64,000 nt of DNA, from assembly GCF_001194135.2 (NCBI RefSeq), contig NC_068993.1:28824672-28888671 (forward strand), read 5' to 3'. The number at the start of each line of letters is the position of its first letter. Position 1 is the stretch's first letter. The position numbers and the translations under genes are program-made. This DNA is from Octopus bimaculoides. Lineage: Eukaryota. Of this stretch, positions 17,597-57,820 are shown piece after piece. The notes below the pieces were generated by a model that made no database searches, was not told the origin of the DNA, and saw only the letters and a list, made by a program, of their open reading frames with translations.

Positions 17597-19550
17597 ATAT
17601 TCCTGAAGCTCTATTAGCACGCTTATTAGTTGTGTTGTATAAAGTGAATAACTATACCATGTACTTCTTCATTATTCTATATCTGCTCAAGGTGAGCACT
17701 TCCTACAGCATCAACCTATGGAGAAACAATTCCTTGGTCAATTTATAAAAAATATCCTGGTTCCACCTAGGGATATGTACACCAATATGCTACTGCAGAG
17801 AATTAGAGAATTCATCAAAAGGTTGAGATAGAAAGCATTTTACTATGATTCAAAATTGGATAATTATAACTTGAAAACCTACAGAAACTTTCCTCACAAT
17901 CCTGCACTACTTAAACTGGAAAAAGACCTCATTAACATGGTAAAAAGACTAAAATTCTTGAGAATCACAAACCACATCCAGAAGAAATTAACTGACATTA
18001 TCTCTCAAATAAAACAAACTCTGATAACCTACATGTTCTTTCTGATAAAACAGAAACCTGTATTCACTACCTACCGACGCCTATAATAACTTTATCTTGA
18101 AGGAATTGAACTCTAAATATAAAATAGTGGCCAATAATAGACTGAATGAAATTAATAAGAACTATTTTGACTTAATTAAGGAGCTAAAATTGCTAGATAG
18201 GACGGAACCTTATGCCCCTAAAATCCCACATTTCACTTTTAAGGACCACAAAACTAACTTTGAGTGCAAACCCACCATTAGGCTAATCTGCCCAACCAGA
18301 TCTGACTTGGACAGAATTAGTAAGTCTATCATTGATAGAATTATCTCTTGTGTTAAAAGAAACACAAACCTCCCACTTTGGATATCCACAGGAGATGTCA
18401 TAACTTGGTTTTGCTCTTTGAATAACAAAAGGAAAACCTGCTTTATACAATTCAAGCTTAGTAATTACTACCAATCTATTAAGCCTGATTTACTCAACAA
18501 AGCAATTACTTTTGTGGAGAATTTTACTAGTATTACACCATTAGAGAAAAATATTATTTTTCACCGCAAGAAAAATACTGATATTCTTCAGAAATAGGAC
18601 TTGGACCCGATATGACCTTCATGACAACTTTGATGTTACAATGGGAAGCTCGGACTGTGTCCAGGTCACAGATATTGTTGGCCTATTTTTACTCTCAAAA
18701 ATTAATGAAGAATTTCCTAATATCAAAGGAGGTCTGTATAGAGACGATGCCTTATTCTCTATATCTGGTTCCTCTGCACAAGCAACTGATAGGATAAGGA
18801 AAAGATTAATTGAATTTTTTAAGTTATACAACTTAGATATTATATTTGAAAATGTTACTAAATGTGTTAACATATTGGATGTAACATTAAATCTAGATCT
18901 AGATGATGGCTTATTCTATCCTTACCATAAGCCTAATCAAACTATTAAGTATATCCACACCTTATCAAATCATCCCCAAAGTGTCATTAAGGGAATAATC
19001 AAAGTTATGTTGATAAGAATATCTAACTTATCTGCAAACAAAAAGATCATCGATGATTTTGCACCCCTTTATAATACAGCATTAAAAGACAGTGGATTCA
19101 ATAGGAAAATATATTATATTAAGAACACAATATTTTAAAATAAATCAGGCAAACGTTTTCCAAATATTTAAACATCGACACACCTCCCATAAACCAACCA
19201 CCCCGAATATAGGAACCAACAACATTTTAGAAGATACTATAATCTAATTATAATAACAATAACTATACTGGGCAGAATAGGAAAACCTTGGGGAGGAGAC
19301 AAGAAATTATATGGTTCACACCTCCCTTTTCCCTCCAGGTCAGAAACCTCCCTAAATTATTTTTTTAGAATTATTGACATGAACTTCCCACTAGGTCATA
19401 AATATCATTCCATATTTAATAGATCCTGCCTTAACTTATCACACTCAAACACTCCCAATCTAGGATCTATGATTGTGGCCAACAATAGACTTGAACTTAG
19501 AAATAACAGCATTAACAGAGATGATTATATAGCTGACCTTAATATAAAGA

Positions 19551-21326: not shown

Positions 21327-22292
21327 TTTTATATTTAATACTCAATATTTTATTTATTCAATAAGACATTCAATACTTCATTTCATTATACTTCATTTCA
21401 TTTTACTATTTATATTATATATTCCATATTCTATATCACACATTAATTTTGTAAGAATATGAATANNNNNNNNNNTATATATATATATATATATATATAA
21501 TATTAGTTATAGAATAAAAACGCTGGGTTAATGACTCAACATATCACACCCCCTTAATGAACATATGTAAGATATACAACATAATCCATAATCCATAATC
21601 CATAAGGAATAAGAAATATATAAGAAGTGAGATGCAAGAAATAGAACAAAAAGTATAAAATTTTATACACAAATGTATTGTTTCAACTGATAACATACAA
21701 ATGAGTTAAAGATATAATACAATACACATAAATATCATTTCATAGAAGTTAAAATTAATACGAATAAAAATTAATACAAATAAAAGGAATAAAAATTTCA
21801 AATATATAATATTATATAGGTCAAACTAAAATAAAGAAAAATAAAATAAAGAAATGAGGTACCATAAAGTAGTCCATTGGTTAAAAATGAAGGACAGAAA
21901 TGATTTAACACTATTTAGAATTAAAGCACAAAGTTCTTCATCTCCCTGTAGACACCAATAGGCAAGTTCTTCATCTCCCTGTAGACACCAATAGGCAAGT
22001 CCGCACCAGTTAGGTATATACAAGAGTGAATAACAGGCACCCAGCAGGTATCAGCATGTAAAACATGTAAAATTTAATTCCGCTCACCAAGTCCAAAAGT
22101 TCACAACACATGGGTCAAAATACAATTACAGCACCCAGCAGGTATCAATCAGTAAAAACAATTTCACGAAAACCACATACAACACCTATGGCCATTTTGG
22201 GGGTACACCACTGTATTATAAACACAATAGAGTGCAAACTGGTGATGACCCCCTCGTCAGGGTAAACTTACGTACAAATGTCACGACATGCA

Positions 22293-23996
22293 ATTTCTTT
22301 ATTAGGCATAAAGCCCCAAACACAGATGAGGACACCACAAGGACAGACAAGACCACAGTGGGGACAAAAAACATAAAACAAATGTAAATGAAACGAAAGT
22401 TATATAAAAATGAGAAAATGAAATGGACGCACGGGCCCCACTCTCATGCATTACCATTTGAACTGTTATATGTACATTTTACAATTGTTCTTTTTTTTTA
22501 ATTTCATACTTTTCTCTTGTCTTTAGTAAAAGTTCATTAGGTGTTCAATTTCTCTTAACTCCACCACTGGTGGTAACTCTTTAAATTCCACCTTTACTCC
22601 TGGCGGGACAACGTTACCCCACACATCTCTTTCAATTTTCTATAGTTTTCTTCTTCGATCACTATTGCCTTCATATCCTCCGCGTAGATGTATGAAGGCA
22701 CCTTTACTCTTACTATTGAATGTAACTTGATTATTTTTTTCTCTATTTCAACATTTATTGAGTACGTTACATAATACCATACTCCTTCTCCTCCTCATAT
22801 CTTCTTTCCTTTCTCTTGGACTTTTGGTTCTCTCTTTTCTTCCTCCCTAAATAGTCTCTCCATCTCACCTTCATACAGTTGGGTTTCCGATACTTTCTCC
22901 ACTGGTAACTCCACTTTCTTTTTCCTTCCTACTGCCCTCCTTCACAATTTCTTTTCTCACCCCTTCCCTCTCCTTTTTCTGCTTCTCTGGCAGAGAACTC
23001 ATTCCTCCGCTCCTCCTTCTTTTCTTTTTAGCCATAGTGAATCCCTTCTCCGCTTCTTTTTCTGTTTCTTTTCTCGTTGCCTTGTCCTGTACTACCTGGT
23101 CCACACTCTCCTGTCTCTCCACCTGTTCTGTTTGTAGCTTCCTTTGGGTGCACCATGCCTTCATGTGGCCCCTTTCTCCACATGTGAAACACACTGGTGG
23201 CCTACCCTCCACCACGATCCGTAGTCGGGTGTCATCGGGGAGCACCAACTCCTCTGCAATATTATGTAGGTCCAGTAGGGTAATGTGGGTTAGGATTTCT
23301 ACCCCAAAACCCTACCATTTGATTTCTCTGGACCTTTCCACCTTGATTATTTTCACCTCATTTTTACATTTGTAAATCACCGCTGCTACCAACCATTCCA
23401 TGTCTATTTCTAGCGGTACTCTACCAATTCTTATTCTCGCCACCCTTCTACCGCAATATACTGGTAAAAGGGCCCACTCCTCTGTTTTCAAAGACATGGT
23501 AGAGTACTTATTTGCTCCTTCTTCAGTCTTGAAATAGACTTTTACTGTTCCATATTTCCTTCCTCTCATGAATAGTACCACTTCCTCCATAATTCTGTTC
23601 AAACAATTTTCAATTACTTCTGTCTTCGCAATTTCGATTTTTTTTAGAGTTAATATTCAACGTTTTATGTATAATAATTTTTTTCTCCGCTTCCTCCATT
23701 ATTTCTTTGGGTGGATTAACCCGCAGACAGTCTCCTTCTTTCTTCAAATACTTGAAATGTCTCTTCAAATTTTCCATTTTAATGTTAACTTCTCTCATTC
23801 CCATGTCACTGGCCGGCCGGCCGCTGCCAGCTGCAGCTGCGTAGCTAGTAGTCATTTAAACACTACAGCAATGACTTCCAACAACAAAATAATTCAATAA
23901 ACAGTAACAAAATAACAGTAACAATTCTTCAACAGTTTCATACAACGATTTCTTAACAACTACTCACACTCTCCTTCAAATTATCACAACACGACT
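22293..23996 (-). mobile_element. Unit A: ORF1/gag-only retroelement-like unit flanked by identical 18-bp direct repeats
   Basis: caaatgtcacgacatgca at 22275-22292 and 23997-24014. About 140-nt 5' UTR, ORF from 23855, T-rich 3' UTR ending cctaataaaagaaat on the minus strand. No RT/EN sequence. Confidence 0.75.
22540..23855 (-). pseudogene. Unit A ORF1/gag-like ORF with CCHC zinc knuckle (frameshifts and a stop)
   Basis: MTTSYAAAAG...GRKYGTVKVYF...LLPVYCGRRVARIRIGRVPLEIDMEWL...VVEGRPPVCFTCGERGHMKAWC (CX2CX4HX4C), basic KKKRRR tract, further C-terminal block YGYYVTYSINVE... Confidence 0.75.
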
Positions 23997-24014
23997 CAAA
24001 TGTCACGACATGCA

Positions 24015-25870
24015 CAAAGGGAAATATCTCTTTATTACCCACTAGGGGCTAAACAAAGAAGGGGACAAACACAATTGGGGAACTAAAATTATAATACAGA
24101 TGTATAAAGAAAGAAAAAAAAAACAAAACGAATGAATTATGGAAAAGATGATACAATGAGGTGGAATGCCCACTCGACCCCTGAAGTCGAGTGGTTAGAT
24201 TGCAACCGTTTTCTTTTTAATTGATCCACCTTAAGTCTAGCAGTTCAATGCCATAGTCCTGTTTAAGTTCAGTATAACAAATGCTTTTCGGCAACTTGTC
24301 TCTATCACCTTTTACTTTCCACAATTCAATCCCTTTATTGTTTTTCACTATTTCCTTTTGTTCCTCATTCAACAAATAACACGTCGCGGCCTTACCATCC
24401 TCCCAGAGTTCCACCTCAACCACATCCTTCTACTCTTTTACCTGTTTCATCAAGTCATCCTCCATGTCCTCATACAGAAGGCAAGCAAAACAAACAGGGG
24501 GAGGGGGAACCTTATTTCCATCGTGTGTGTTTGTATCTNNNNNNNNNNNNNNNNNNNNNNNNNNNNNNNNNNNNNNNNNNNNNNNNNNNNNNNNNNNNNN
24601 NNNNNNNNNNNNNNNNNNNNNNNNNNNNNNNNNNNNNNNNNNNNNNNNNNNNNNNNNNNNNNNNNNNNNNNNNNNNNNNNNNNNNNNNNNNNNNNNNNNN
24701 NNNNNNNNNNNNNNNNNNNNNNNNNNNNNNNNNNNNNNNNNNNNNNNNNNNNNNNNNNNNNNNNNNNNNNNNNNNNNNNNNNNNNNNNNNNNNNNNNNNN
24801 NNNNNNNNNNNNNNNNNNNNNNNNNNNNNNNNNNNNNNNNNNNNNNNNNNNNNNNNNNNNNNNNNNNNNNNNNNNNNNNNNNNNNNNNNNNNNNNNNNNN
24901 NNNNNNNNNNNNNNNNNNNNNNNNNNNNNNNNNNNNNNNNNNNNNNNNNNNNNNNNNNNNNNNNNNNNNNNNNNNNNNNNNNNNNNNNNNNNNNNNNNNN
25001 NNNNNNNNNNNNNNNNNNNNNNNNNNNNNNNNNNNNNNNNNNNNNNNNNNNNNNNNNNNNNNNNNNNNNNNNNNNNNNNNNNNNNNNNNNNNNNNNNNNN
25101 NNNNNNNNNNNNNNNNNNNNNNNNNNNNNNNNNNNNNNNNNNNNNNNNNNNNNNNNNNNNNNNNNNNNNNNNNNNNNNNNNNNNNNNNNNNNNNNNNNNN
25201 NNNNNNNNNNNNNNNNNNNNNNNNNNNNNNNNNNNNNNNNNNNNNNNNNNNNNNNNNNNNNNNNNNNNNNNNNNNNNNNNNNNAGTACAAGTTCTTCATC
25301 CTTCAATGAAGTTTCCGCATACTTCTTTACCGTGTCTCCGTTTGTGAATCTCACCTCCACTTAACCAAATTTCGGCCCTCTGGCAAGATATGATATTTCT
25401 TGCCAGATTGGCCTCAGCACCTTCTCCACCTGCGCCGTCAACATATGGTCTACCTTGCCTTTCTTAATTGAGAATGTTTTGTACATAATAGTTCTGCCTT
25501 TCATACTTTTTGTTATTTTGAGCGGAGGGGTCACATTAACGTTGTAACCGTCACGCTTCAACAATGTCTTATATTTCTTTGTGTCAATTTCTACATTTTC
25601 CTCTTCTTTTCGGGCAACCTCCGCAAACTTCCTTTTATCGAGGTCCACGTCCATAGCGTCAACCGCTTTCAATGATTCTTCCTCAGATGACGAATACTCA
25701 GACCCGCTAAAGTCTGAGTAAAAGGTATTCCTTTTACTTTTAGCCATACCAACTCTCAAAGAGAGAACGTAAGACTACACCGCTGCAAAGCAGCACGCAA
25801 CAAATACAACAATCCTTTCTGAACGATATATCACCAATAACCCAAACCTTTACTGGCCAACTCACACTTT
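24015..25870 (-). mobile_element. Unit B: ORF1/gag-only unit (middle in N gap 24539-25283)
   Basis: N-terminus MAKSKRN...TIMYKTFSIKKGKV...RPIWQEISYLARGPKFG*VEVRF; C-terminus PPPPVCFACLLYE...GIELLDLRWIN. 3' UTR nearly identical to unit C. Confidence 0.7.
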
Positions 25871-25886
25871 GAACATCAAGATATGC

Positions 25887-27388
25887 ACAAAGGGAAATAT
25901 CTCTTTATTACCCACTAGGGGCTAAACAAAGAAGGGGACAAACACAATCAGGGAACTAAAATTATAAAATGGAGGTATAAAGAAAGAAACAAAATAAAAG
26001 AAAAGAATGAATTATGAAAAAGATGATATAATGAGGCGGAATGCTCACTCGACCCCAGACGTCGAGTGGTTACATTGATACCGTTTTGTTGTTCAATGCC
26101 TTAAATCTAGCAGTTCAATTCCATAGTCCTCTTTCAGTTTAGTATAATTAATCTTTTTTGGCAACTAGTCTCTATCGCCAATGACTTTCCACCAATCAAT
26201 GCCTTTATCATTCTTTTTTACTATTTCACATTGTTCTTTGTTTACCATATAACTCATCGTAGTCTCACCATCATCATCCAAGAATTCTACTTCCACCATA
26301 TCCTTCCACTCGTTCAACCGTTTTACCGTGTCATCTCCCGCGTTCTCATACAGAACGCAAGCAAAACAAATAGGGGGAGGGGAAATCTTATTTTCATCGT
26401 GTGTATTTGTATTTTTTTCTGTTTTCTTGTTGGAGGGGATTGGGTAGGTTTGGTGTCTGTATTGGGAGGGTGAGGTGAAAAGGGAGCGGATGGGCACTGG
26501 GTGGGTTGGGGTTCACAATTACTTTCTTTCTTTTTCTTTTTTTCCTCCTCACTGCTGTTTCCCATTCCTTATTTCCTGGAGTTTCTTTTTCCACTTCTTC
26601 TTGTCTCCTCTCTTGTGGTGGTGGCTGTCGCTCCTCTACCATTTTGGGTGGTGTAGGGTAGTTCGCTCTTATGTGGTCCTTCAGGCCACATTTGAAGCAA
26701 CGTGGAACTCTTCCTTCTACCCTAACAGTCATAGTTATTTCATCCATGGTTATAGATTCTGTAATCTTTTCTACCGTTTCTTTTGACCCTTGGACTATCA
26801 TCTCCAATTGCTGACCTCTCCAGTTAATGCAGTCTTTTATTCTTGGCCTGGAGCACTACTATGTTGTCCTCATTACCACAGAGGACCGTATCTGCCACCC
26901 AGGACACATCAATCTCCGGTGGGATTCCTTCCACTGTGATCCTTGTCGCTCTCCTGCCTCTATACGTGGGCAACAGCACCACTTCTTCACTTCGAATTGT
27001 TGAAGCTGCATGTTTCCTTGCTGCTGCCGCATTCCGGAACCTTACTTCTACTGTTCCAAAAGTGGAACCTTTAGCCAGGTATGTTATATCATCCCAAATC
27101 TGCCTCAACGCCTGTTCTATTTTCTCTGTCGTGACGACATCAATTTTTCCTTTATTTATCGAATAGGTTCGATAGTTTATCGTTTTCTGCCTTATTCCGT
27201 CTTTTACTTCTTGCGGGGGCTTCAGCTTCACTTCGAACCCGTCTTGTGTCATTTCTCCTTTATGCTTTCCTAGTTCGCCAATATTCAGTTCCATCTCCTT
27301 ACACCTTGCTGCATCAGCAAAATTCCTGTTCTCTGTTGTCAGCATTTGGTCCATTAATTTCACAGCCTTCCGCAACTCTTCATTGGAT
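25887..27388 (-). mobile_element. Unit C: ORF1/gag-only unit (5' end runs into N gap)
   Basis: TINYRTYSINKGKI...RQIWDDITYLAKGSTFGTVEVRF...LLPTYRGRRATRITVEGIPPEIDVSWV...VEGRVPRCFKCGLKDHIRANY (last Cys mutated), RRKKRKRKK, PPPICFACVLYE...GIELLDLR. Confidence 0.78.
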
Positions 27389-28253
27389 NNNNNNNNNNNN
27401 NNNNNNNNNNNNNNNNNNNNNNNNNNNNNNNNNNNNNNNNNNNNNNNNNNNNNNNNNNNNNNNNNNNNNNNNNNNNNNNNNNNNNNNNNNNNNNNNNNNN
27501 NNNNNNNNNNNNNNNNNNNNNNNNNNNNNNNNNNNNNNNNNNNNNNNNNNNNNNNNNNNNNNNNNNNNNNNNNNNNNNNNNNNNNNNNNNNNNNNNNNNN
27601 NNNNNNNNNNNNNNNNNNNNNNNNNNNNNNNNNNNNNNNNNNNNNNNNNNNAATCTTCGAGGTTTCAAATCACCCTAACACAAACTATTACACTTGTTAT
27701 TATCTATTGCTTTTAAATTTATTTTTATTTCTATACAGTTTCAAGAAGGTGGAGGAAAACTTATGGTTGCAGAAGGGGATTACCTCGGTGAACTTATTTA
27801 TGGTTTTTGGTCCAAAAGACCTGAGTATCGCAAGGGATTCCCTAATACATAAAGAACATTTACTAATATTTGCCTTAAAGTAGGGGGCCCTCGATATAAC
27901 AGACCATTCAAGAGAGTACTTTATATTCTTCTTCTTTCATGCACTGTCAGGGACGAGAACAAACTAGATAGGTTTTATACAGGATGCATGAAGAACTTTA
28001 AGGCTAGATATAGAGCGCATATGAGTTTGTTTACAATTGAAAAATACCGTAACTCTACCACACTCGCCTCTTATTTACATGACCTCAATTTGATTATCTA
28101 TATTTGCTCTTTTATAAAAATTATTTTTCCCTTTGTGCATGCATAATTCTTTTTGAATTGTGTACATGATTTTGGATATTGTTACCTCATAAGTGGAGTA
28201 TTTAATTTGATTTTGATTGTTGTACTGTGTTTTGTTAATTTTATTGTTAATTT

Positions 28254-28545
28254 TTGGAAAAATTGTCACAGTTGGTGAAACCTGCAACGGTTTCCCCGTG
28301 TAGGGAAACCTACACGATGGCAGAAATGAGGAGCGAACTAACAGAACAAGAAATCAAAAGAATATGTGAGATAGAATTAATTCCGGACGAAGATGAACAA
28401 CTGAGAATTATAAGAAATCAGCCAGCAACGTTGAAAAGAAATATAGATGTAAAAAGCCTTAAAACAAAGGAATCAAATGAAAAAGAAAAGGAAAAAACGA
28501 CAAGAAAAAAGTTAGACTTTGCAGCGGTGGCTGGTGCCAAACAAG
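28254..28545 (+). pseudogene. Possible N-terminal fragment of a related ORF1-like element
   Basis: Charged open frame ending KKLDFAAVAG, similar to KRKFAEVAR / RNFADAAR / TSYAAAAG in units B/C/A. Weak similarity only. Confidence 0.3.
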
Positions 28546-28549
28546 ACCT

Positions 28550-29400
28550 CTTCCCAAGCGACCCTAGATTTCACTGTGGATGCTGAAGATAATCAACTGC
28601 CACTGCAAGGCCTACTTGCATGGCAACATAAATGAGTACCACTGGTTCAACCAAATATGCAACAACACCATTACAAATGACCGAAAGAAGCTCTGGGTGG
28701 AAGAAGCCAAGCATTTGGTGGCAGCAGCAAGGAACAATGAGATCAGCAAGGTATATAACATGCTCTGTAGAGCCTGTGCCAATCCCAGTTCAAGATAGCC
28801 TTAGTGAAGGATACTAATGGCAATGTCATCACCGCAAAAACTGCATGCTTCAAACACTGGAAGGAACAGTTCAGCCTTCTTCTCCATCGCCCACCTGACC
28901 AAATTGATCCCAGCCTAACCATTACTGCAGACACAGCTGCAACCAACAACACTTGTAAACTCGATCCTGCTACCCCTGATGAAGTCAGTTCTGCCCTGAA
29001 GAAGCTCAACAACTGCAGAGCCCCCAGAATCTGCATTATTATCATGGAGATGTTGAAGGCAGGCAGAGAAAATTTGGTCCATTGACTCACTCACATCATC
29101 AACCATGTATGGGTATTAGAGCAACTCCCAAATGACTGGACCTGAAGCCATCATCCTCCCCTTCTGGAAATAGAAGGGCAACAAACTCTTCTACAGTAAC
29201 CACAGGAGCCATCACCCTCCTCTTCATCCTAGCCAAGCTCTTCACCAGGATCATTCTCAACCATGCAATTTCTGCAGTTAGAAGCAGATGCTACCCACAA
29301 CAAGCCAGATTCATGCGAATCAATCTACTGCCAACCATATTTTTGCCTTTTGTCTCATTGTTGTAAGATCTCAGGAGTTCTGCAAAGATATGTTTGTTTT
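28550..29400 (+). mobile_element. RTE-type LINE internal fragment (second family)
   Basis: KDTNGNVIT...HWKEQFSLLL...EVSSALKKLNNCRAPRICIIIMEMLKAG, followed by a frameshifted LPNDW / IILPFWK..KG..SNHR region. Confidence 0.75.
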
Positions 29401-30269: not shown

Positions 30270-33200
30270 GGTTTTTTACAGGTAATTCAAAATAAATATC
30301 AACATAGATACCCTCTTAATGGGGGTGCCTCTAAACAAAAATATCACCATCACAATCTGGACAATGTTTGCTGCATATGTACTGACTGCCTTCATAAGAT
30401 CATTTATATCTGTAACATTTACTACCTCCACATGATTGGTTATCGTATTTATTCTATCCACTATTGATTTCAATCTTCCTCGGTTAATTTTCTTATTTTC
30501 TGAGAACTCTCTCTTCTGTGCAATTTCTATGATCTCTTTCAAAGTTTGTTGTTCTTTGTTGTTTAATTGTTCTACATGTGTTAATGAAATGTCAGTTTCA
30601 GAATGAATTTAATTTCTTCTTTTCCCTCCTGTAGCTTCTTCACCCATATTTTGTTCATTATGTTTATCTTCAGTTGGTACTTCAATTTGGACTTCATTGA
30701 TTTTCCTCCTTATGGTTTTGAGCTCTAACTCAGTTAATCATTGGTTTTTGTGGATTGCTCTGGCTTGGTCACTCAGTCTTTGTTTTGTTGTTTCAAGCAG
30801 GCCTCACTCAGACCACTCTCAGAACATCATCCATCTATATCCTCTCTTTAGAACTCCATTTTCATCAACTGGGTTGGTCCTGTAATAGCAGAGGTTTTAG
30901 AGCGATTTGTGGAGTAGTAGAAAGGCACATAAATTGGATGCAAATTGGCTTAATGAACTGAAGCAAGAATTAACAGGTAGGGTCCAACACAAAGTTAGTA
31001 TCACACAAAAAATGGCCAAGATGCAGTGCTGCAAAATTCCTAATCGGAAGGCTCCTGGAGGTAATGGAGTTCAAGGGTACTGGATCAAGAAGCTTACAGC
31101 ATGCATGAAAAGATCACAGTGGAATTCAATGAAACTTTAAATAGCTCAAAGCCATTGCCCTCATGGATAAGACTTGTGGGGGACAGTGCTTTGTCTGAAG
31201 AATGCATCAAAAAAGGAATGCAGTAGACAATTTCCACCCTATTTTTTGCCTTCTAATTTTCTAAGTTTTTTGAAGTTATTGACAGGCATCTTGTCACAAA
31301 GCATATATTCCTTCTTGGAAAAAGAAAACATCCTTCCATAAGAACAAAAAGGTCGTAAACGAAGAAGTAGAGAAATAAAAGATCAGCTCTTGATTGATAA
31401 AGCCATTCTCAGAGATTACAAAAGAAGACTGTCAACCTTTCAATGGCATGGATTGAATGCTGAAAGGCATATGACCTCGTTTCCCATTCATGGAAAGTAG
31501 TGTGTCTGGCCCTTTTTGGAGTAGCCAATAATATAAGAGAATTTATTCAGCAGTAGATGGAGAGTTGGAAAGTTGCGTTAACGTCATGTGGTAAAGTGCT
31601 TCGAGAGGTCACAATCAAGAGAGGGATTTTTCAGAGCAAAAGCCTATCACCACTTTTATTTGTCCTGTGCATGACTCCTTTGTTTATTTTACTGAGAAAG
31701 ACTAGCCTTATTTATAAGTAGGGACAAAACCTTAAAGTTAACCATTTTTTATTTATGGATGACTTGAAGTTGTTTGGAAAGAACCAGCCACAAGTAGACT
31801 TATTGATCAAAACAGTACACCTGTTCAGTGAGGTCATAGGAATGGCGTTCAGGTTAAAGAAATGTGGAGTTCTAATACTTCAAAGAAGAGAGGTGGTGAG
31901 AACTGAAGTGATAGAACTACCAGATGGAAGTGTCATAAGGGATGTTGAAGAGAGTTGGTGTAAGTACTTTGGCATCCTGAAGGCTGACAGAATAAGAGAT
32001 AAACCAGATGAACTGAGAAATGAGGAATAAAATGACTATGTATGGAGCTTTACACTCTAAAAGTAACATGCACAGGATACACTTATCACAAAAAGATGGC
32101 GGAAGAAGTATGACAGGTTGCGAAGATTGCAAAAGAAGTGAAGAAAATAGTCTTGGTTGGTATATTCAGAACAGCACAGAACCATTACTCATGGGAGTTA
32201 AACTGGATGGGATCATAGAAACAGAGTTGTGTACCAACAAAGAAGAGTTCAAGAAAAATGCAGTTGAAAAGAAAGTTGCAAGGTTGCAAGACAAGGCGAT
32301 ACATGGACAGTTCCTAAGAGATGTAGATACTCTAATTTTTGGAAAGATATGATGGGGTACCCAAATGAAACCGGAATTTTGCAATATTATTTTATTCACT
32401 TAGCTTTACATATTTAAACTTTATCGCCTTCAAAGTATCTCCATTTGAAGCAATGCACTAGTCCAGATGTATTTTCCACTGTTTGAAGCAATCCTAGAAC
32501 TTTTGCGAAGTGATGCCTTTTAATGCCTCTGTTGTTTTATTCTTCACCTCTTCCACATCTGCAAAACGTTTTCCTTTAAGGACTTTTTTCATTTGGGAGA
32601 ACAAAAAAATGTTGCCGGGAGTAAGATCAGGTGAATAGGGAGGGTGGGTAAATGTGGTCATGCTGTTTTTGGTCAAAAACTGTTTCACACTCAAGGAACA
32701 GTGTCATGATGAAACCACTACTCACCACTTTGCCACTGCTTGGAGTGTTTCGCCATGTCTTGCAAATGCTTCAGAACTTCCAATTAAAATGTCTGGTTAA
32801 CAGTTTGATCAGTAGGAGCAAATACTATGTGGACAATATTTTTTGCATCAATGAAACAAATTAGCATTGTCTTGACATTGGACTTCATTTGATGCACTTT
32901 TTGGGGGTGTGGTGACATTGAATGCTTCCATTGACTTGATTGCTGTTTTGTTTCTGGGTCGTAGCCATCACACCAGCTTTCATCACCAGTGATGACCTTC
33001 AAAAGAAGGTCCAGATCAATTTCCAACTGTTCTTTCATTTCACGACATGCATTCAGTCATGACTGCTTTTGATGTGTAAGCAAGTGAGGCATAAATTTTG
33101 CTGCAACTCTTTTCATTTGCAATTCCTTGCTCAAAATTCATTAGGAGGAGCTCCAGGACATGCCAGTCATATCAACAAGTTCATCAATTATTTGGTGATG

Positions 33201-49927: not shown

Positions 49928-51634
49928 TGTGATCTTTGCTACCTTGGTATCTATTAACCAATTTATTTTGTCGGAGTTAATTATTAACTAAGAGAAAATA
50001 AATACATATAATAAAATATACTTAAAACAGGCCATTACATAACCTGCTAATATAATAGTTACCACAAATGGAGTTATTTAACATCAATGCATCTCTTAAG
50101 GATATACCTATTCCACCAAGGAATACATTCCTTAAACACCTTATTAGTAAGACAAACTCTTTTATCAACCGAGTGAGATGACTAATCTTTTTCTTTGATA
50201 ACAAGAATGATCAACAAAAACACAAGGATTTAACTTCAGATTTTAAAAAACTATTCAAATCCAAAAACAACCCACCACCAAACCCGAGATTGAAGCAGTT
50301 CAAAGATCTTTGGACAATCGTGAAGAATGTTAAGTTCCACAAATCACCATTAAGAAATAGTCACCTCAGATACCTCAACAACATCACTAAGGAAATTAAT
50401 AGCATTGATGGCATACTAGTTAAGTCTGATAAAACAGGAAACATGTACAAACTATCTAAGGAACACTACAACGAATTACTCAAAAGAGAAATAGAAAAGA
50501 ACTATTGAATCACAAGTAAAACAGCACTTAGGAAAGCTAACCTGAAAGCCAAACAAATCATGGATAAATATAACTTACAAAAGAGGACTGAACCTTTGGA
50601 CCCTAAACAACCCCGATTTGTTTTAAAGGACCACAAGAAAAACTTTTGGAGTAGCCCCAAATTATGTCTTATCTGCCCATCTAAGTCGGACGTAGATATT
50701 CTTAGTAAAAACATACTAGACAAATATATACCTACTTTAGTCAAAAAATTAAAACTTAGTTTGTGGTCAAATTCATTACAGGTAGTAGATTGGTTTCGTA
50801 ACATCAATGATAAACATAACACCAAATTTATCCAGTTTGATATCTCTAACTTCTATTCTTCAATTAATCCCATTTTACTAAATAAGGCACTCTGGTTTGC
50901 TCGTAATAAGGCGGGTCTTTCTAGAGAAGAGATTGATGTTGTTTTAGCAGCTAAAAAATCTATAATTAAATTTAATAATAGACTATGGACATGCAAGGAC
51001 ACTCCCGATGGTTTTGACATGCCTATGGGAAGTTCCGACTCAGCACAGATAGCTGGTTTGGTCTGCGCATATATTCCCAACAATTAGGGGCGGTTTATAC
51101 CAGGATGACTGCTTGCTCTATCTCCATAATACCACAAACCAAAAAATACAAAAAGTTAAAAATAGATTAGTCAGGTTTTCTGTAGAATGGGTTTTGGTAT
51201 CATCTTTGAGGATGAAATCTCCATAACCAATTTCCTTGATGTCACTCTAGACCTACACACCAATACCTTTTTCCCTTACCATAAACCCTCCACTAATCCT
51301 AAGTATATTGGCCAGTTTAGCAATCATTCCAAAATGGTAACTAGAAATTTAGTTAAGAACATATCACTTAAATTGTCAAATCTATCCGCAAATGAAAATA
51401 TTTTCAACAAAGAAGCTGACTTTTATAACTCTGCCTTACTAAAAGCAGGATATAAAGAAAAGGTCAGATACCTTAATTCTACTTACGATCTTTCTGCCTA
51501 TGATAATAAGGATATTAAAATTGATAGTAACGATAAATACAATGATTGTCCTCATCATAACCCTATTGACAATAACATACAGTCAAACGCTTTTTTACAT
51601 TATAGGGGAGGTAACCGACAATTTAAACCCTTTT

Positions 51635-51667
<33 letters not shown>

Positions 51668-53773
51668 TGAAGTTTTTTAGGAATAATAACACATATACAA
51701 CACCTGAATCTGATAAAAAGTATCTGGTTAATAATTCCATTTGGAAAACAGATTAAATCAAATCTGGTTTCTCAGTTCCGAAATGCTGTTAATAAGAATT
51801 TTCCAAGACATTCTCACTACTTCCCAGTCATAAACACGCACAAGGTTAGATTTGGATTTTCAAACACTAAAAATATCTCGCAAATGATATTCGCACACAA
51901 TATGAGACTATTAAATTCGCACACGGGTACCGATAGCAACAACATTAATTCCGACAATACAAACCATCACCATTATAACAATAACAATACAGATAATAAC
52001 CTAAATAACAATAATTATAATAAGAAATATAATAATAATAATTACCGCAACAGCATCATTATTTCGGAAGTTAATAGCAACAGAATTAGTTTTTTAAGTG
52101 ATAATGCAAAATTCAAGAACACTATATATCAATGCAAAGTCACCACCCCTACTGCTGTATCTTTTTACATTGGATCTTCATCTTCGCCAATTTCCAGAAG
52201 AATATCAAACCATTATTCCTCTTTTAGGGATAGAAATAAACGCAACACAATGAGTCTTAGCAAATTAATTTGGGGACTATTATGTTATACGGAACTGTTC
52301 TTCATTTTATTCACAAAGAATAAACTTGTGAACACGTTCATCGAAAGAGCATACAGATGTAAACATTGGCAAGCTCATGTGTTTTCTTCATATAAATAAC
52401 CCTTACAAACTTATATAACAGAGACAACTTACCTATTTATCTATTAGTTATTCACATAATTCAAGCGATGCAAGTTAATTATACCTTTATATGTATAAAG
52501 GTATAATTGGCTTGTATCACTTATCTGAACACTTTCTATTATTTGAACCCAAATTAAGACACCCAGCACGTCTATAAACATGAACTTAAACATTACTTTC
52601 AGCTTAACTTAACATAAACATTACTTCCAACTATGTTCAATACGTTGTGCTCCAATAACCTTATACCTTTGATTTCATTGCTCCTTCGTAACTCCATCTC
52701 CTTCACTTGTTGCCTTCACTTTCTTCAGCAAAGATAGGAGTTATTTATCCTGTTTAGGCTATGTTAGTGGCATTATTCTGCGTCTGAGAATTTTAATTGT
52801 CTTCTTTAAATTTCTTAGACATATCTAAGATTCTGAAAGCAACCTTAGTTTGTTTGTTTACGTTTATCGTAAGATGAATTCAAAACATATAAATATTTTC
52901 TTCTCCCTGCTTTATTACGTATAAAATACTGCACCATGCAAAATTTTATTTTATCTATTGGAAAACCCTTGCATCAACAAATATAGAGGGTNNNNNNNNN
53001 NTAGTTCATACAAGCATCATTTTCCTATACATATAGCATTGCCTTAATCTTCATTTCCACATGACTATCGTGTGTATGTGCATACAAATGTATGTGTATG
53101 TATGTATGTGTGTGTGTATATATGTGTGTATATATGTATATATATATGTATGTGTACATGTGTATGTATGTATATGAACATGTGTGTGTATATATTTATA
53201 TGCATTTATGTCAACCCTACATGTATAAATACAAGATTAATTCCCCTTTGCGGTCCCATTATACATAAAACACTCTTCTCCCATTTTTAATCAGGTTTTA
53301 AATAATTTTTTTGACTTCTCATTCTAAATTCTAAATTTCTTTTCCTTCTTTTCTTCCCTCCTTGTCTAATGTACTGTTTCGTAGCGTTGCAACTTCCAAA
53401 TAAGATAGGTAGCAATCTTCTCTACCCACAGTTATCACATTTGGTTAAAATGTCTTACGGTTAAGTTGGCTCTTATATATTTCCCTGAAGAGAAAATTAC
53501 ATCTTTATCAACATCACTTATTCCTTTGGAAGGAACCATTTGTAATCTTCGAAACATATGTCGGAAATAAAAGAATTCATTTAACATATGCGTATTACTC
53601 CATTTATTAAATTTTATATTTACTCAAATGCCCAAAATAACAGGGAGTTTCTATCTCATAAACAGGAGTTACACCACAGTCATTTTGTGATCTTTGCTAC
53701 CCTGGTATCTATTAACCAATTTATTTTGTCGGAGTTAATTGTTAACTAAGAGAAAATAAATACATATAATTAT
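49928..53773 (+). mobile_element. Penelope-like retroelement (RT + GIY-YIG) with pseudo-LTR direct repeats, decayed
   Basis: LICPSKSDVDILSK, FIQFDISNFYSSI, MPMGSSDSAQIAGLV, ITNFLDVTLDL..YHKP, EN TIYQCKV...FYIGSS..RRISNHYSSFR. 85-bp repeats 49928-50012 / 53686-53770 with 2 mismatches. Confidence 0.92.
53478..53569 (+). ncRNA. Type I hammerhead ribozyme, apparently intact
   Basis: Stem I tatttcc/ggaaata (7 bp); core CTGAAGA (53485-53491); stem II gaaaattaca/tgtaatcttc (9 of 10 paired); GAAAC; loop ATAT; GTC with predicted cleavage after C53562. Confidence 0.88.
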
Positions 53774-55934: not shown

Positions 55935-57377
55935 ATGACACCTACTCCACCTCCTACTCTTTCTTCTGCTTCTTCAGCGAAAATGTCTGTGCAGGTGCAA
56001 CAGCAGAAGGTTATGAGTTCAAATTTGGCTGACTCTTCTTTATCTGACCCAAATTTGAACAGATTACAGCAAGATACTCCAAAAATCATTAGTCAAATAA
56101 TTATGGATAAAGCTGCTGATAGTAATAGGGTAAAAAATAACACCAGCATCACTTTTGACAGTGGCAGCAGTAATAACAACAGCAAGAAAAGCAGCTATCA
56201 AGAGAATTTTCAAAATATAGAAGGTTACTGGTCTGAAAGTCGCAGTACCACAGAAAAGTCCACTCAAACCAATAGGCTATCTCTGATGAGTATTCCAGGT
56301 GACTGGCTTTGGACAGAGCTGCAAAGCAACAATAACAAAACCAATTTACCTGCAAACACAGACAATCTTGTTGACCCAACACAAAATTCTAACTTGAAAA
56401 TGCTAACTACTTCAACACATACAGATAATCATATTAAAGAACCAAATTCAAATATGTGGCAGATCCCCAGCCCGGAGTTACAAGTAATGGTCAACACACA
56501 TACCAATGCTGTGGTAAAACGGAAGAATTCATTGAAGTATACCAAGAGTGAGAATAAAGATGAGAAAAAAGGGAAACAAAATAAACAGGATTTTCAAAGA
56601 AAGTTGGTGGCAAGAGCTTTGCATTCATTTGCCATGAGTAATAACAAAAGCAATAATAGGAAAAATAACATCAACAAAAATCAGAATAATTTTGATGATA
56701 ACTCTTTAATCATTAGTAACAAACCAGCAATAACAAGCCAAGAGAATTTACCTGTGATAGATTTACCTCAAAAGCAAGAATGTTCCACATTACAACTTTC
56801 AGCAGCAGAGTGTGAAAAAGATGGAGCTTCTGATAAACCTACAGAAGTTTGCAATGAAATTATTGGGAATAAGTCTGATCTCAAAAAATCTATGATAGAT
56901 AAAAAAGAAATTAACAATGCAGTTGAGTCAAAGAAGACCCCTAGTAAAAATGCAACTGTAAACAATTTTGATGATATTGCATGTTGCATAAAAATAACCC
57001 CTCCAAATGCTCACTCAAAAAACTTGTCAATTGATTCACAGCTTCCCAGGAATGCTACCTGGAGTGGCACCAAACGACTTAATATTGAAAAAACCATTTT
57101 AGATTGGATGCATAAAAGATATTGTGCTGAGCAGTATCGGAAGAAACGGTCATCATCAGCAGATACTGTTAATTATATTCATGGCCAACATTTTGTTCAG
57201 GTGCTCAACAAAACACTTAATGGAACTGGCAATGAAAGAGAAATCCCATTGTTTTCTGTCTACAAATTACCAAAATCTACTATTCACCTTGGTAATTACC
57301 AAACAGCACCACCATCATTTCGCAGAGAATTCAAACATAAGCACCATGGAATTATTACCAATGGAACTCTTGATAAA
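55935..57377 (+). CDS. Large coding exon of an unidentified host gene (N/S/K-rich, low-complexity N-terminus); exon 55796-57377, continues after a phase-0 intron
   Basis: 481 uninterrupted codons in AT-rich DNA. Acceptor ttttttgctttatacag|G at 55795/55796; donor AAA|GTAAGA at 57377/57378. No TE motifs recognised. Confidence 0.8.
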
Positions 57378-57820
57378 GTAAGACATTCATTTTAGCTATT
57401 TTGTTTGTTTTAAAATCATTTCTTGTTTTCTTTATATTTTATTCTTTAGCCCTTTTTATATCAACCTGAGAACTGGAAACATCTCTGCCTTGTTAAAACT
57501 CTTGTTTTAAAATGCATGCATTTAGATTAAAACCTTTCATCTTAATTTTATGTAAGAACTTTCTAATAGGTTAAGTCCCAAATACCAACTTAATTAACTA
57601 ATTGATGGGAATGTTTATTTTTATATTGTTATATTTCAGGATGGTCACTTTTTTTTTTTTTTNNNNNNNNNNACTTTATATTCATTCTTCACTTTAGCTT
57701 TATTATTGATCTTATTTTAGTGCCCTTTGTTTGAAATTTTTCGTCACATATCCTGTGACTTCTTCAGTTACTCTCCATCCCACATGTCAGGAGGAGACAC
57801 ATGGAATACGAAATCATGCT

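What the first reader, a model, noticed from the sequence alone, without database searches (positions are those of the whole stretch)
22275..27388. Head-to-tail array of three diverged gag/ORF1-only retroelement-like units with no polymerase
Seen: three minus-strand units of about 1.7-1.9 kb in tandem. Each has one ORF of roughly 450-480 codons (B partly in a gap) and a T-rich 3' UTR ending in AATAAA; A and B show short 5' UTRs, C's 5' end is in a gap. A and C show TFG/KYG-TV-V-F...LLP.Y.GRR..RI...P.EID..W, VEGR.P.CX2CX4HX4C and a basic tract; B matches C at both ends. No RT or endonuclease in any sequenced part, and the gaps (745 and 263 nt) look too short to hold one. The units differ strongly in protein sequence, so this is not a recent tandem duplication. 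Known precedent: ORF1-only non-autonomous LINEs (mammalian HAL1; Drosophila HeT-A, which forms head-to-tail arrays). Inference: a family of non-autonomous, probably site-specific retroelements that supply only an RNA chaperone, borrow an RT in trans and stack at one target. I cannot tell whether it has been described.
Basis: partly seen in the sequence, partly recalled or inferred. Interest (0 to 1): 0.8.

Follow-up and report, generated by a model that had tools for sequence, protein, structure and literature searches.

The report
Stacked ORF1-only octopus LINE copies
Three dead, head-to-tail copies of an octopus LINE retrotransposon that kept its first gene and both ends but lost the reverse-transcriptase gene; a real but fairly ordinary kind of parasitic DNA, with an unusual habit of inserting next to earlier copies.

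Summary
The window is Octopus bimaculoides-like DNA. The three minus-strand units are real, and their junctions lie in contiguous sequence. None has an intact ORF: A has 3 frameshifts and 2 stops, B has 2 stops, C has 2 frameshifts and 1 stop.

The protein is ORF1p of an octopod L1/Tx1-like LINE (two RRM-like domains, a CCHC knuckle, a basic tract, a C-terminal domain). In four other loci, ORF1 is followed within about 60 nt, or overlapped, by an endonuclease/RT ORF2.

The window units keep the 5'UTR, ORF1 and 3'UTR, including the family's 3' terminal box. ORF2 is cleanly absent at its canonical place, whatever the gaps hold.

ORF1-only units also occur elsewhere. Three of them have their own target-site duplications, in O. 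sinensis and O. bimaculoides. They therefore move as ORF1-only elements, presumably using ORF2p supplied in trans. At least three different deletion junctions exist.

Stacking is a family trait. Full-length copies stack too, and one O. sinensis array mixes both kinds. Unit A has a perfect 18-nt duplication, so it inserted separately beside unit B.

Strict site-specificity is not shown. I rate it a new member of a known kind, of moderate interest.

The parts
25899..27388 (-). Unit C, sequenced part: ORF1 remnant plus 3'UTR. The 5'UTR and about 25-30 N-terminal codons are lost in gap 27389-27651.
26093..27388 (-). C ORF1 remnant. Frameshifts near 26830 and 26420, in-frame TAG at 26165-26167, final TGA at 26093-26095. 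CCHC knuckle at 26658-26699 with its last Cys changed to Tyr.
25899..26092 (-). C 3'UTR. Stem-loop at 26045-26069 (CCACTCGAC/GTCGAGTGA). Terminal box AGCCCCTAGTGGGTAATAAAGAG at 25901-25923. Terminus ...AATAAAGAGAT at 25899.
25883..25898 (-). 16-mer ATTTCCCTTTGTGCAT between C and B, repeated at 24010-24025 after B. Possibly the TSD of B, but B and C are identical over the last 66 nt, so it cannot be separated from homology.
24026..25882 (-). Unit B. 5'UTR 25748-25882. ORF1 5' part 25284-25747 (ATG 25745-25747, TAA stop at 25361-25363). Gap 24539-25283. ORF1 3' part 24217-24538 (TAG at 24430-24432, final TAA at 24217-24219). 3'UTR 24026-24216 with a 9-bp stem-loop at 24170-24194 and the terminal box at 24028-24050.
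24010..24025 (-). Second copy of the 16-mer ATTTCCCTTTGTGCAT. Its last 5 nt overlap the 18-mer TSD of A.
23997..24014 (-). Upstream copy of the perfect 18-nt direct repeat TGCATGTCGTGACATTTG (TSD of unit A).
   Evidence: (family D12)
22293..23996 (-). Unit A (1704 nt). 5'UTR 23856-23996. ORF1 22523-23855, about 444 codons after repair, with 3 frameshifts and 2 stops. CCHC at 23150-23191. 3'UTR 22293-22522, ending GGGGCTTTATGCCTAATAAAGAAAT.
22275..22292 (-). Downstream copy of the 18-nt TSD of A. The sequence beyond it (22274 down to 20501) has no similarity to any family locus.

Best explanation
The three units are old, inactivated copies of ORF2-less (ORF1-only) derivatives of an octopod L1/Tx1-like LINE group.

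What each unit is. Each has a LINE 5'UTR, ORF1 and a LINE 3'UTR. ORF1p has two RRM-like domains, one CCHC knuckle, a basic tract and a small C-terminal domain. The 3'UTR has a stem-loop at its start and the conserved terminal box G(C/G)CCYT..TGGNYAATAAAGA(A/G)AT, with no poly(A). The 3.4-kb EN/RT ORF2 that sits between the ORF1 stop and the 3'UTR in full-length relatives is missing almost exactly.

How they move (inferred). Such RNAs keep the promoter-bearing 5' end, their own RNA-binding protein and the 3' module. That module is presumably what the family's ORF2p recognises to start target-primed reverse transcription. They would therefore be copied in trans by ORF2p from full-length relatives.

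How the stack formed (partly shown). New copies of this LINE group, full-length or ORF1-only, tend to integrate at or within a few nucleotides of the termini of resident copies. Each makes its own 13-19 nt TSD. This builds head-to-tail stacks of unrelated subfamily members. Here, A inserted 11 nt downstream of B's 3' terminus, and B lies directly at C's 3' terminus.

Shown: homology, architecture, absence of ORF2, TSDs, recurrence at other loci.
Inferred: trans-mobilisation, 3'-box recognition, and the cause of the end-homing.
For: Organism and family:
- The named homologues looked up are all octopod proteins.
- A profile search found 875 representatives at E<=1e-3.

ORF1 identity:
- ORF1 is followed within about 60 nt, or overlapped, by an ORF2 starting M..(I/V)GCLNV(R/K)GL. 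This is seen in L002, L003, L001, L004 and L009 u2-u4.
- ORF2 has Exo_endo_phos, RVT_1 and zf-RVT domains.

Fold:
- The AF2 model of the A-like ORF1p P0014 has pLDDT above 90 over residues 30-230.
- Top PDB matches are tandem RRMs with probability about 1.
- zf-CCHC is detected.

ORF2 absent here:
-.
- In all three units the ORF1 stop and 3'UTR are contiguous.

Shared ends:
- 3'UTR and terminal box are shared with full-length LINEs.
- A small terminal hairpin is 88.9% paired, against 17-47% in slid controls, with CG:4/GC:4 at one pair.
- A's 5'UTR is homologous to the O. vulgaris LINE 5'UTR (score 46; shuffles 25 +/- 4).

Mobility as ORF1-only units:
- L008: solo 1.6-kb unit inside a SINE, with a 19-nt TSD.
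- L009-u1: 1691 nt, with a perfect 16-nt TSD.
- L006-u1: 13-nt TSD.
- L005: three stacked ORF1-only units.

Selection on ORF1 between ORF1-only lineages:
- dN/dS is 0.13-0.17 (A vs L005) and 0.38 (B vs C).

Separate insertion of A:
- A has a perfect 18-nt TSD.
- Apart from the B/C homology tract, it is the only non-low-complexity exact repeat of 16 nt or more at 1.5-2.1 kb spacing in the window.

Stacks elsewhere:
- L003: three full-length units, 99.0-99.6% identical.
- L009: one ORF1-only unit, three full-length units and a fifth that starts with ORF1 and runs off the locus, from different subfamilies, in a gapless assembly.
Against: - Only nine other loci were sampled. They were reached through annotated gene models or Logan contigs, so frequencies are not known.
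- No full-length parent close to A, B or C was found. The best ORF1 identity to a full-length LINE is about 35-40%. The deletion breakpoints are therefore inferred across large divergence.
- The low dN/dS could reflect selection in full-length parents, if ORF1-only copies are made repeatedly.
- B's 16-mer 'TSD' is embedded in a 66-nt stretch where B and C are identical.
- C's 5' flank is in a gap.
- Trans-mobilisation and recognition of the 3' box are untested.
- RT phylogeny (L1 versus Tx1) was not done.
Confidence: 0.85

Rival explanations
1. The ORF1-only copies are not a self-perpetuating non-autonomous lineage. They are recurrent dead-end by-products. Full-length LINE RNAs repeatedly lose ORF2, either by RT template switching between short repeats at the two ends of ORF2 or by splicing. 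Each product is inserted once.
For: - At least three different ORF1-to-3'UTR junctions exist. B/C have TTAAGG followed by GGATCA/CATTG. L008 and L009-u1 keep GGTAAG(T/C)GATG, including the ORF2 ATG, and run straight into the 3'UTR hairpin. The A type differs again.
- A short repeat AGTGATG / AGTGGTG brackets ORF2 in L003.
- A consensus-like 5' splice site TAAG|GTAAGT lies between ORF1 and ORF2 in L003 and L004.
Against: - Window A and L007 share the same post-stop sequence, although their ORF1s are only 38-51% identical. That suggests one old ORF2 loss followed by diversification.
- L008 and L009-u1 share one junction type.
- The GTAAG motif is retained in L008 and L009-u1, so splicing at that site did not make them.
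- No good 3' splice site is visible at the end of ORF2 in L003.
Confidence: 0.3
2. The whole C-B-A array was laid down in a single integration event. The reverse transcriptase jumped from the 5' end of one LINE RNA to the 3' end of the next.
For: - The C/B junction is direct: a complete 3' end is followed at once by a 5' end.
- In L005 a complete 3' end abuts a 5'-truncated unit.
- The density of disabling mutations is similar in A, B and C.
Against: - A has its own perfect 18-nt TSD inside the array.
- L009-u1 and L006-u1 also have private TSDs within stacks.
Confidence: 0.12
3. A local tandem duplication of one element, followed by in-situ deletion of ORF2 and divergence, with no transposition of ORF1-only units.
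For: - B and C share an 82%-identical 3' 530 nt.
- The O. vulgaris array L003 is clearly a recent duplication, 99% identical.
Against: - A is only 29% aa identical to C and does not align at DNA level.
- The N halves of B and C are 42% aa identical.
- ORF2 would have had to be deleted separately in each unit.
- ORF1-only units with TSDs exist elsewhere.
Confidence: 0.03
4. A tandem cluster of host genes domesticated from a retroelement gag/ORF1, now pseudogenes, or an assembly artefact.
For: - Public annotations call relatives 'uncharacterized protein' or 'CCHC-type domain-containing protein' genes.
- The window is a gapped draft.
Against: - All three ORFs are broken.
- The units carry LINE UTRs and TSDs.
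- Relatives are followed by ORF2.
- The junctions lie in contiguous sequence.
- The same structures occur in a gapless O. sinensis assembly.
Confidence: 0.02

Closest known systems
HAL1 (mammalian 'half-L1', an ORF1-only L1 derivative; recalled from Bao & Jurka 2010)
   Same: 5'UTR, ORF1 and 3' end of a LINE, with ORF2 missing. Dispersed copies with TSDs. ORF1 appears to have been kept by selection. Presumed mobilisation by the parent's ORF2p.
   Different: The parent clade differs. ORF1p here is Type I (RRM + CCHC), not Transposase_22. There is no poly(A) tail. ORF2 was lost at least three times. Copies stack head-to-tail.
HeT-A of Drosophila telomeres (recalled)
   Same: A gag/ORF1-only non-LTR element that relies on an RT supplied in trans and forms head-to-tail arrays mixed with RT-bearing relatives.
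   Different: HeT-A joins chromosome ends through oligo(A) and has no TSDs. Here the junctions have no A tracts, units have TSDs, and the arrays are interstitial with ordinary repeats on both sides.
L1/Tx1-group LINEs with Type I ORF1p, including target-specific Tx1 lineages (PMC5203782 for ORF1 types; Kojima & Fujiwara 2004 recalled)
   Same: ORF1 with RRM(s) plus CCHC. ORF2 with APE endonuclease, RT and zf-RVT. One subfamily (L001, L002) is followed by (ATT)n, and in L002 also preceded by it, like microsatellite-targeting Tx1 relatives.
   Different: The window units lack ORF2. Clade placement by RT phylogeny was not done. No single target sequence is shared by independent insertions.
SpIREs (spliced integrated retrotransposed L1 elements; recalled from Larson et al. 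2018)
   Same: Internally deleted LINE copies that are retrotransposed.
   Different: SpIREs arise by splicing and mostly lose 5'UTR/ORF1 parts. Here ORF2 is lost, and two lineages retain the splice-donor-like motif.

Membership tests
L1/Tx1-group LINE (non-LTR retrotransposon) | ORF1p of Type I: RRM domain(s) plus a CCHC knuckle | tested here: met
   zf-CCHC detected. The AF2 model shows two RRM-like domains, and the top PDB matches are tandem RRMs. Definition taken from PMC5203782.
L1/Tx1-group LINE (non-LTR retrotransposon) | ORF2 with APE endonuclease and reverse transcriptase (plus zf-RVT) | tested here: not met
   Absent from all three window units. Present in relatives L001, L002, L003 and L009; only the endonuclease start is seen in L004. 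The units are derivatives, not autonomous members.
L1/Tx1-group LINE (non-LTR retrotransposon) | Insertion by TPRT leaving target-site duplications | tested here: met
   18-nt perfect repeat around A. TSDs around L008, L009-u1 and L006-u1.
L1/Tx1-group LINE (non-LTR retrotransposon) | RT phylogeny placing it in L1 or Tx1 | not tested
   No reference RT set was on hand.
ORF1-only non-autonomous LINE (HAL1-like) | Keeps the parent's 5' end, ORF1 and 3' end; ORF2 deleted | tested here: met
ORF1-only non-autonomous LINE (HAL1-like) | Dispersed copies of the same architecture, each with its own TSD | tested here: met
   L005 (3 units), L006-u1, L008, L009-u1, and probably L007. The sample is small.
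ORF1-only non-autonomous LINE (HAL1-like) | ORF1 maintained by purifying selection within the ORF1-only lineage | tested here: inconclusive
   dN/dS is 0.13-0.38 between ORF1-only copies. Selection in full-length parents cannot be excluded.
ORF1-only non-autonomous LINE (HAL1-like) | Mobilised in trans by the parent's ORF2p | not testable with these tools
   Needs a retrotransposition assay.
HeT-A-type telomeric array | Terminal attachment with oligo(A) junctions and no TSDs | tested here: not met
   The junctions have no A tracts and A has a TSD.
Sequence-specific (target-specific) LINE | The same target sequence at independent insertions | tested here: not met
   The TSDs differ: TGCATGTCGTGACATTTG (window), CAGAAAYGTTAGCACGCCG in a SINE (L008), GGATGTGATATAATGA (L009), ACACAACMCAGTT (L006). 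The common feature is closeness to the termini of resident copies. TGCA(T)GTCGTGA recurs in the L003 flank but was not evaluated genome-wide.
Domesticated gag/ORF1-derived host gene | Intact ORF under selection at a fixed locus | tested here: not met
   All three ORFs are broken.
LTR retrotransposon (gag-only, shared LTRs) | Long terminal repeats flanking each internal region | tested here: not met
   The inter-ORF regions B/A and A/downstream are not repeats of each other.

The most novel reading that the evidence does not exclude
This octopod LINE group 'homes' to its own copies. The integration machinery prefers the termini of resident elements, whose 5' ends begin with GTCGTG-like sequence resembling the window's target. 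Interstitial head-to-tail stacks therefore grow by successive insertions of unrelated subfamilies. Within this system, ORF1-only derivatives have arisen several times, by near-exact loss of ORF2 between short repeats. At least some have persisted as long-lived parasites of the full-length elements, with ORF1 under selection.
Probability: 0.3. Interest if true: 0.65.

Novelty: new member of a known kind. Interest (0 to 1): 0.48.

Why it matters
ORF1-only LINE derivatives are rarely documented; HAL1 and HeT-A are the textbook cases. They bear on two questions. What does ORF1p contribute in cis? How are non-autonomous RNAs chosen by a LINE's reverse transcriptase?

Octopus genomes are very repeat-rich, and their LINEs have been linked to brain expression. 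Yet the paper read here (PMC9115989) covers RTE and Dong elements and does not mention Tx1.

If end-homing stacking is confirmed genome-wide, it would be a compact natural system for studying target choice in a non-telomeric, non-rDNA LINE.

There is also a practical point. Several UniProt and RefSeq 'uncharacterized protein' or 'CCHC-type domain-containing protein' entries in four octopod species are ORF1s of this LINE group, or chimeric models spliced across stacked units.

Tried and rejected
- Rfam scan of the whole window at gathering thresholds found nothing: no ribozyme, tRNA or snRNA target.
- LTR reading rejected. The inter-ORF regions are not repeats of each other.
- Look-ups of P0001 and P0002 found no contigs. 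The second homologue search with alignment A4 was swamped by low-complexity words and returned only 4 proteins.
- Idea: the sequence downstream of A is the 5'UTR of a fourth unit. Local alignment was not above shuffles, and blastn against all loci found nothing.
- Idea: GTCGTGACATTTG is A's own 5' end rather than a TSD. I considered this because of its collinearity with the O. vulgaris 5' end. I now think it less likely, because other copies end at AATAAAGA(A/G)AT and carry private TSDs.
- Idea: ORF2 was removed by splicing at TAAG|GTAAGT. This is weakened, because L008 and L009-u1 retain the GGTAAG(T/C)GATG motif.
- Logan contigs of 1.9-2.3 kb are not ORF1-only transcripts. L004 runs into the ORF2 start.
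- Pfam found nothing at E<=0.01 for the other window ORFs I tested.
Full report
**1. What the window is.**
The window is 35% G+C, has CpG o/e of 0.31 and contains 16 runs of N. The repaired unit-C protein hits only two proteins, both from Octopus bimaculoides. This is a draft octopus scaffold rich in repeats.

**2. The observation.**
Three units lie head-to-tail on the minus strand.
- Unit A is fully sequenced: 22293-23996. Its 5'UTR is 141 nt, ORF1 is 23855 to 22523, and the 3'UTR is 230 nt.
- Unit B is 24026-25882 and is interrupted by the 745-N gap.
- Unit C is 25899-27388. Its 5' end is in the 263-N gap.
- Both inter-unit junctions lie in contiguous sequence.

None of the ORFs is intact.
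- A has three frameshifts and two in-frame stops.
- B has two stops in about 260 sequenced codons.
- C has two frameshifts, one stop and a Cys-to-Tyr change in its zinc knuckle.

Divergence is large.
- A vs C is 29% aa identical.
- B vs C is 42% aa in the N half, 63% aa in the C-terminal part and 88% nt in the 3'UTR.
- A is not alignable to B or C at DNA level.

The flagged gap lies inside ORF1. The part it replaces is 564 nt in C, so the 745-N estimate is of the right order. Frame across the gap cannot be known. It does not affect the ORF2 question, because in B and C the ORF1 end, stop codon and 3'UTR are contiguous.

**3. What the protein is.**
A profile of the repaired proteins finds 875 representatives at E<=1e-3. 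The named ones looked up are all octopod: O. bimaculoides, O. vulgaris, O. sinensis and Argonauta hians.

DNA around annotated members shows what they are.
- O. sinensis (L002): an intact 615-aa ORF1 is followed 40 nt later by ATG-ANLRIGCLNVRGLG, the start of an APE endonuclease, and then an RT.
- O. vulgaris (L003): ORF1 of 503 aa and an overlapping intact 1132-aa ORF2 with Exo_endo_phos, RVT_1 and zf-RVT.
- O. bimaculoides (L001) and a Logan contig (L004): the same ORF1-then-ORF2 layout.

An AlphaFold model of the A-like ORF1p P0014 is confident (pLDDT above 90) over residues 30-230. It shows two beta-alpha-beta-beta-alpha-beta domains. Its best PDB matches are tandem RRMs such as IMP3 RRM12, Sxl and HuD, with probability about 1. 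With the CCHC knuckle, this is a Type I ORF1p as defined in PMC5203782, which notes that such proteins fit the Tx1 clade. The family is an L1/Tx1-like LINE, but the clade was not resolved by RT phylogeny.

**4. ORF2 is missing and both ends are kept.**
- tblastn with the O. vulgaris ORF2 finds no family ORF2 in the window.
- The 3'UTRs of B and C align with the full-length LINE's 3'UTR. The alignment runs from a stem-loop just after the ORF2 stop to the terminal box.
- Across nine elements, ORF1-only and full-length, the box G(C/G)CCYT..TGGNYAATAAA is conserved.
- A 4-bp hairpin in the box is 88.9% paired, against 17-47% for slid controls. One pair splits CG:4/GC:4. This is modest evidence from few sequences.
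- A's 5'UTR is homologous to the O. vulgaris 5'UTR.
- No unit has a poly(A) tail. The family-wide terminus is AATAAAGA(A/G)AT.

**5. ORF1-only units are mobile entities.**
- L008 (O. sinensis, gapless): a solitary 1.6-kb unit with 5'UTR, ORF1 and 3'UTR lies inside a SINE. It is flanked by CAGAAA(C/T)GTTAGCACGCCG.
- L009-u1: a 1691-nt ORF1-only unit with a perfect 16-nt TSD, inserted at the very 5' end of a full-length LINE.
- L006: an internally deleted B/C-type unit with a 13-nt TSD, sitting just upstream of an A/P0014-type 5'UTR and ATG.
- L005 (O. bimaculoides): three stacked ORF1-only units with no ORF2. Two are 97% identical and one is 5'-truncated.
- L007: an A-type ORF1 whose post-stop sequence matches A's and has no ORF2 start. 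A 2.1-kb gap follows.

The ORF1-to-3'UTR junctions are of at least three kinds, so ORF2 was lost more than once.
- B and C have TTAAGG, then sequence resembling the last codons of ORF2.
- L008 and L009-u1 keep GGTAAG(T/C)GATG, including the ORF2 ATG, and then run straight into the 3'UTR hairpin.
- The A type is different again.

In L003, short repeats AGTGATG and AGTGGTG bracket ORF2. This suggests template switching or recombination (inference). Splicing at the donor-like TAAG|GTAAGT is weakened, because the motif is retained in two ORF1-only lineages.

dN/dS between ORF1-only copies is 0.13-0.38. This is consistent with ORF1 mattering for propagation. It does not exclude selection acting in full-length parents.

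**6. Stacking.**
- The 18-mer TGCATGTCGTGACATTTG flanks A exactly (22275-22292 and 23997-24014). Apart from the B/C homology tract, it is the only exact non-low-complexity repeat of 16 nt or more at unit spacing in the 64 kb. A therefore integrated on its own, 11 nt downstream of B's terminus.
- B lies directly at C's terminus and is flanked by the 16-mer ATTTCCCTTTGTGCAT. B and C are identical over the last 66 nt, so this TSD is only possible, not shown.
- Stacks are a family habit. L003 holds three full-length units at 99.0-99.6% identity, most simply a recent duplication.
- L009 holds one ORF1-only unit, three full-length units of different subfamilies and the start of a fifth unit that runs off the locus. 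ORF2 identity of the three full-length units to O. vulgaris is 68-80%, 89% and 95%.
- In L009 and L006 the newcomer sits at the 5' terminus of a resident copy.
- The targets share no clear sequence. TGCA(T)GTCGTGA does recur in the L003 flank, and several 5' ends begin with GTCGTG-like sequence. Whether this is a target preference needs a genome-wide test.

**7. Age.**
CpG o/e of the units is 0.57-0.72. That lies between young copies (0.81-0.86) and the window background (0.31). With 2-5 disabling mutations each, these are old, dead copies.

**8. Verdict.**
These are ORF2-deleted, HAL1-like derivatives of an ordinary autonomous octopod LINE group. They are stacked by repeated integration next to resident copies. 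I rate this a new member of a known kind. I could not check Repbase or Dfam.

Noticed in passing
L003 4445-19184 (O. vulgaris OX597840.1): Three head-to-tail full-length LINE units with a 5.28-kb period, 99.0-99.6% identical. The first unit has intact ORF1 (503 aa) and ORF2 (1132 aa), so it may be an active element. An internal A-run of about 21-36 nt in the 5'UTR varies in length between units.
   Followed up: partly
L009 2479-20850 (O. sinensis CM016867.1): A gapless mixed stack: one ORF1-only unit, three full-length LINEs of different subfamilies and the start of a fifth unit, all in one orientation. Junctions u2/u3, u3/u4 and u4/u5 share GAATACTCGTCAT.
   Followed up: partly
L002 9700-9780 and 15346-15375; L001 16985-17040: The P0004/P0154 LINE subfamily ends ...GGCCAATAAAA(A/C)GAATTA followed by (ATT)n. 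In L002 it is also preceded by (ATT)n. This could be microsatellite targeting or a templated 3' tail.
   Followed up: no
L003 11326-11342; L004 1847-1861; L009 4027-4040; L008 10896-10910: A conserved TAAGGTAAGT(G/C)ATG motif joins the ORF1 stop to the ORF2 start. It looks like a consensus 5' splice site, or a termination-reinitiation signal. It is retained in two ORF1-only lineages.
   Followed up: partly
Proteins P0001, P0012, P0018, P0045, P0048, P0058, P0133: Public gene models are artefacts of this repeat. P0001 (A0A0L8G4Z0) is spliced from a B-like unit into an A-like unit, each about 90% identical to the window's B and A, which implies a paralogous B-to-A pair elsewhere. Other models fuse ORF1 fragments to LDL-receptor, WD40, C2H2 zinc-finger or Helitron helicase sequence.
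   Followed up: partly
window 24010-24075 vs 25883-25948: B and C are 100% identical over their last 66 nt, while the rest of their shared 3' part is about 80-90% identical. This points to strong constraint on the 3' terminus or to gene conversion.
   Followed up: no
window 28254-29085 and about 31300-32000 (+): LINE-like ORF fragments of other families lie head-to-head with the array. The stretch at about 31.4-31.9 kb matches RVT_1 (E 1e-10), and it is only 28% identical to the O. vulgaris ORF2.
   Followed up: partly
window 18097-19138 and 50560-52399 (+); 43087-45451 (-); 55935-57395 (+): Two related ORF sets look like another repeat family (..KDHK.NF...P...LICP..SD.D..SK.I.D.). There are also two minus-strand ORFs of unknown nature and a 486-aa low-complexity ORF. 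None has a Pfam hit at E<=0.01.
   Followed up: partly
window 21931-21996 and 22037-22157: Just downstream of the array there is a perfect 33-nt tandem duplication and an 85%-identical 27-nt repeat 94 nt apart. Their origin is unknown.
   Followed up: no
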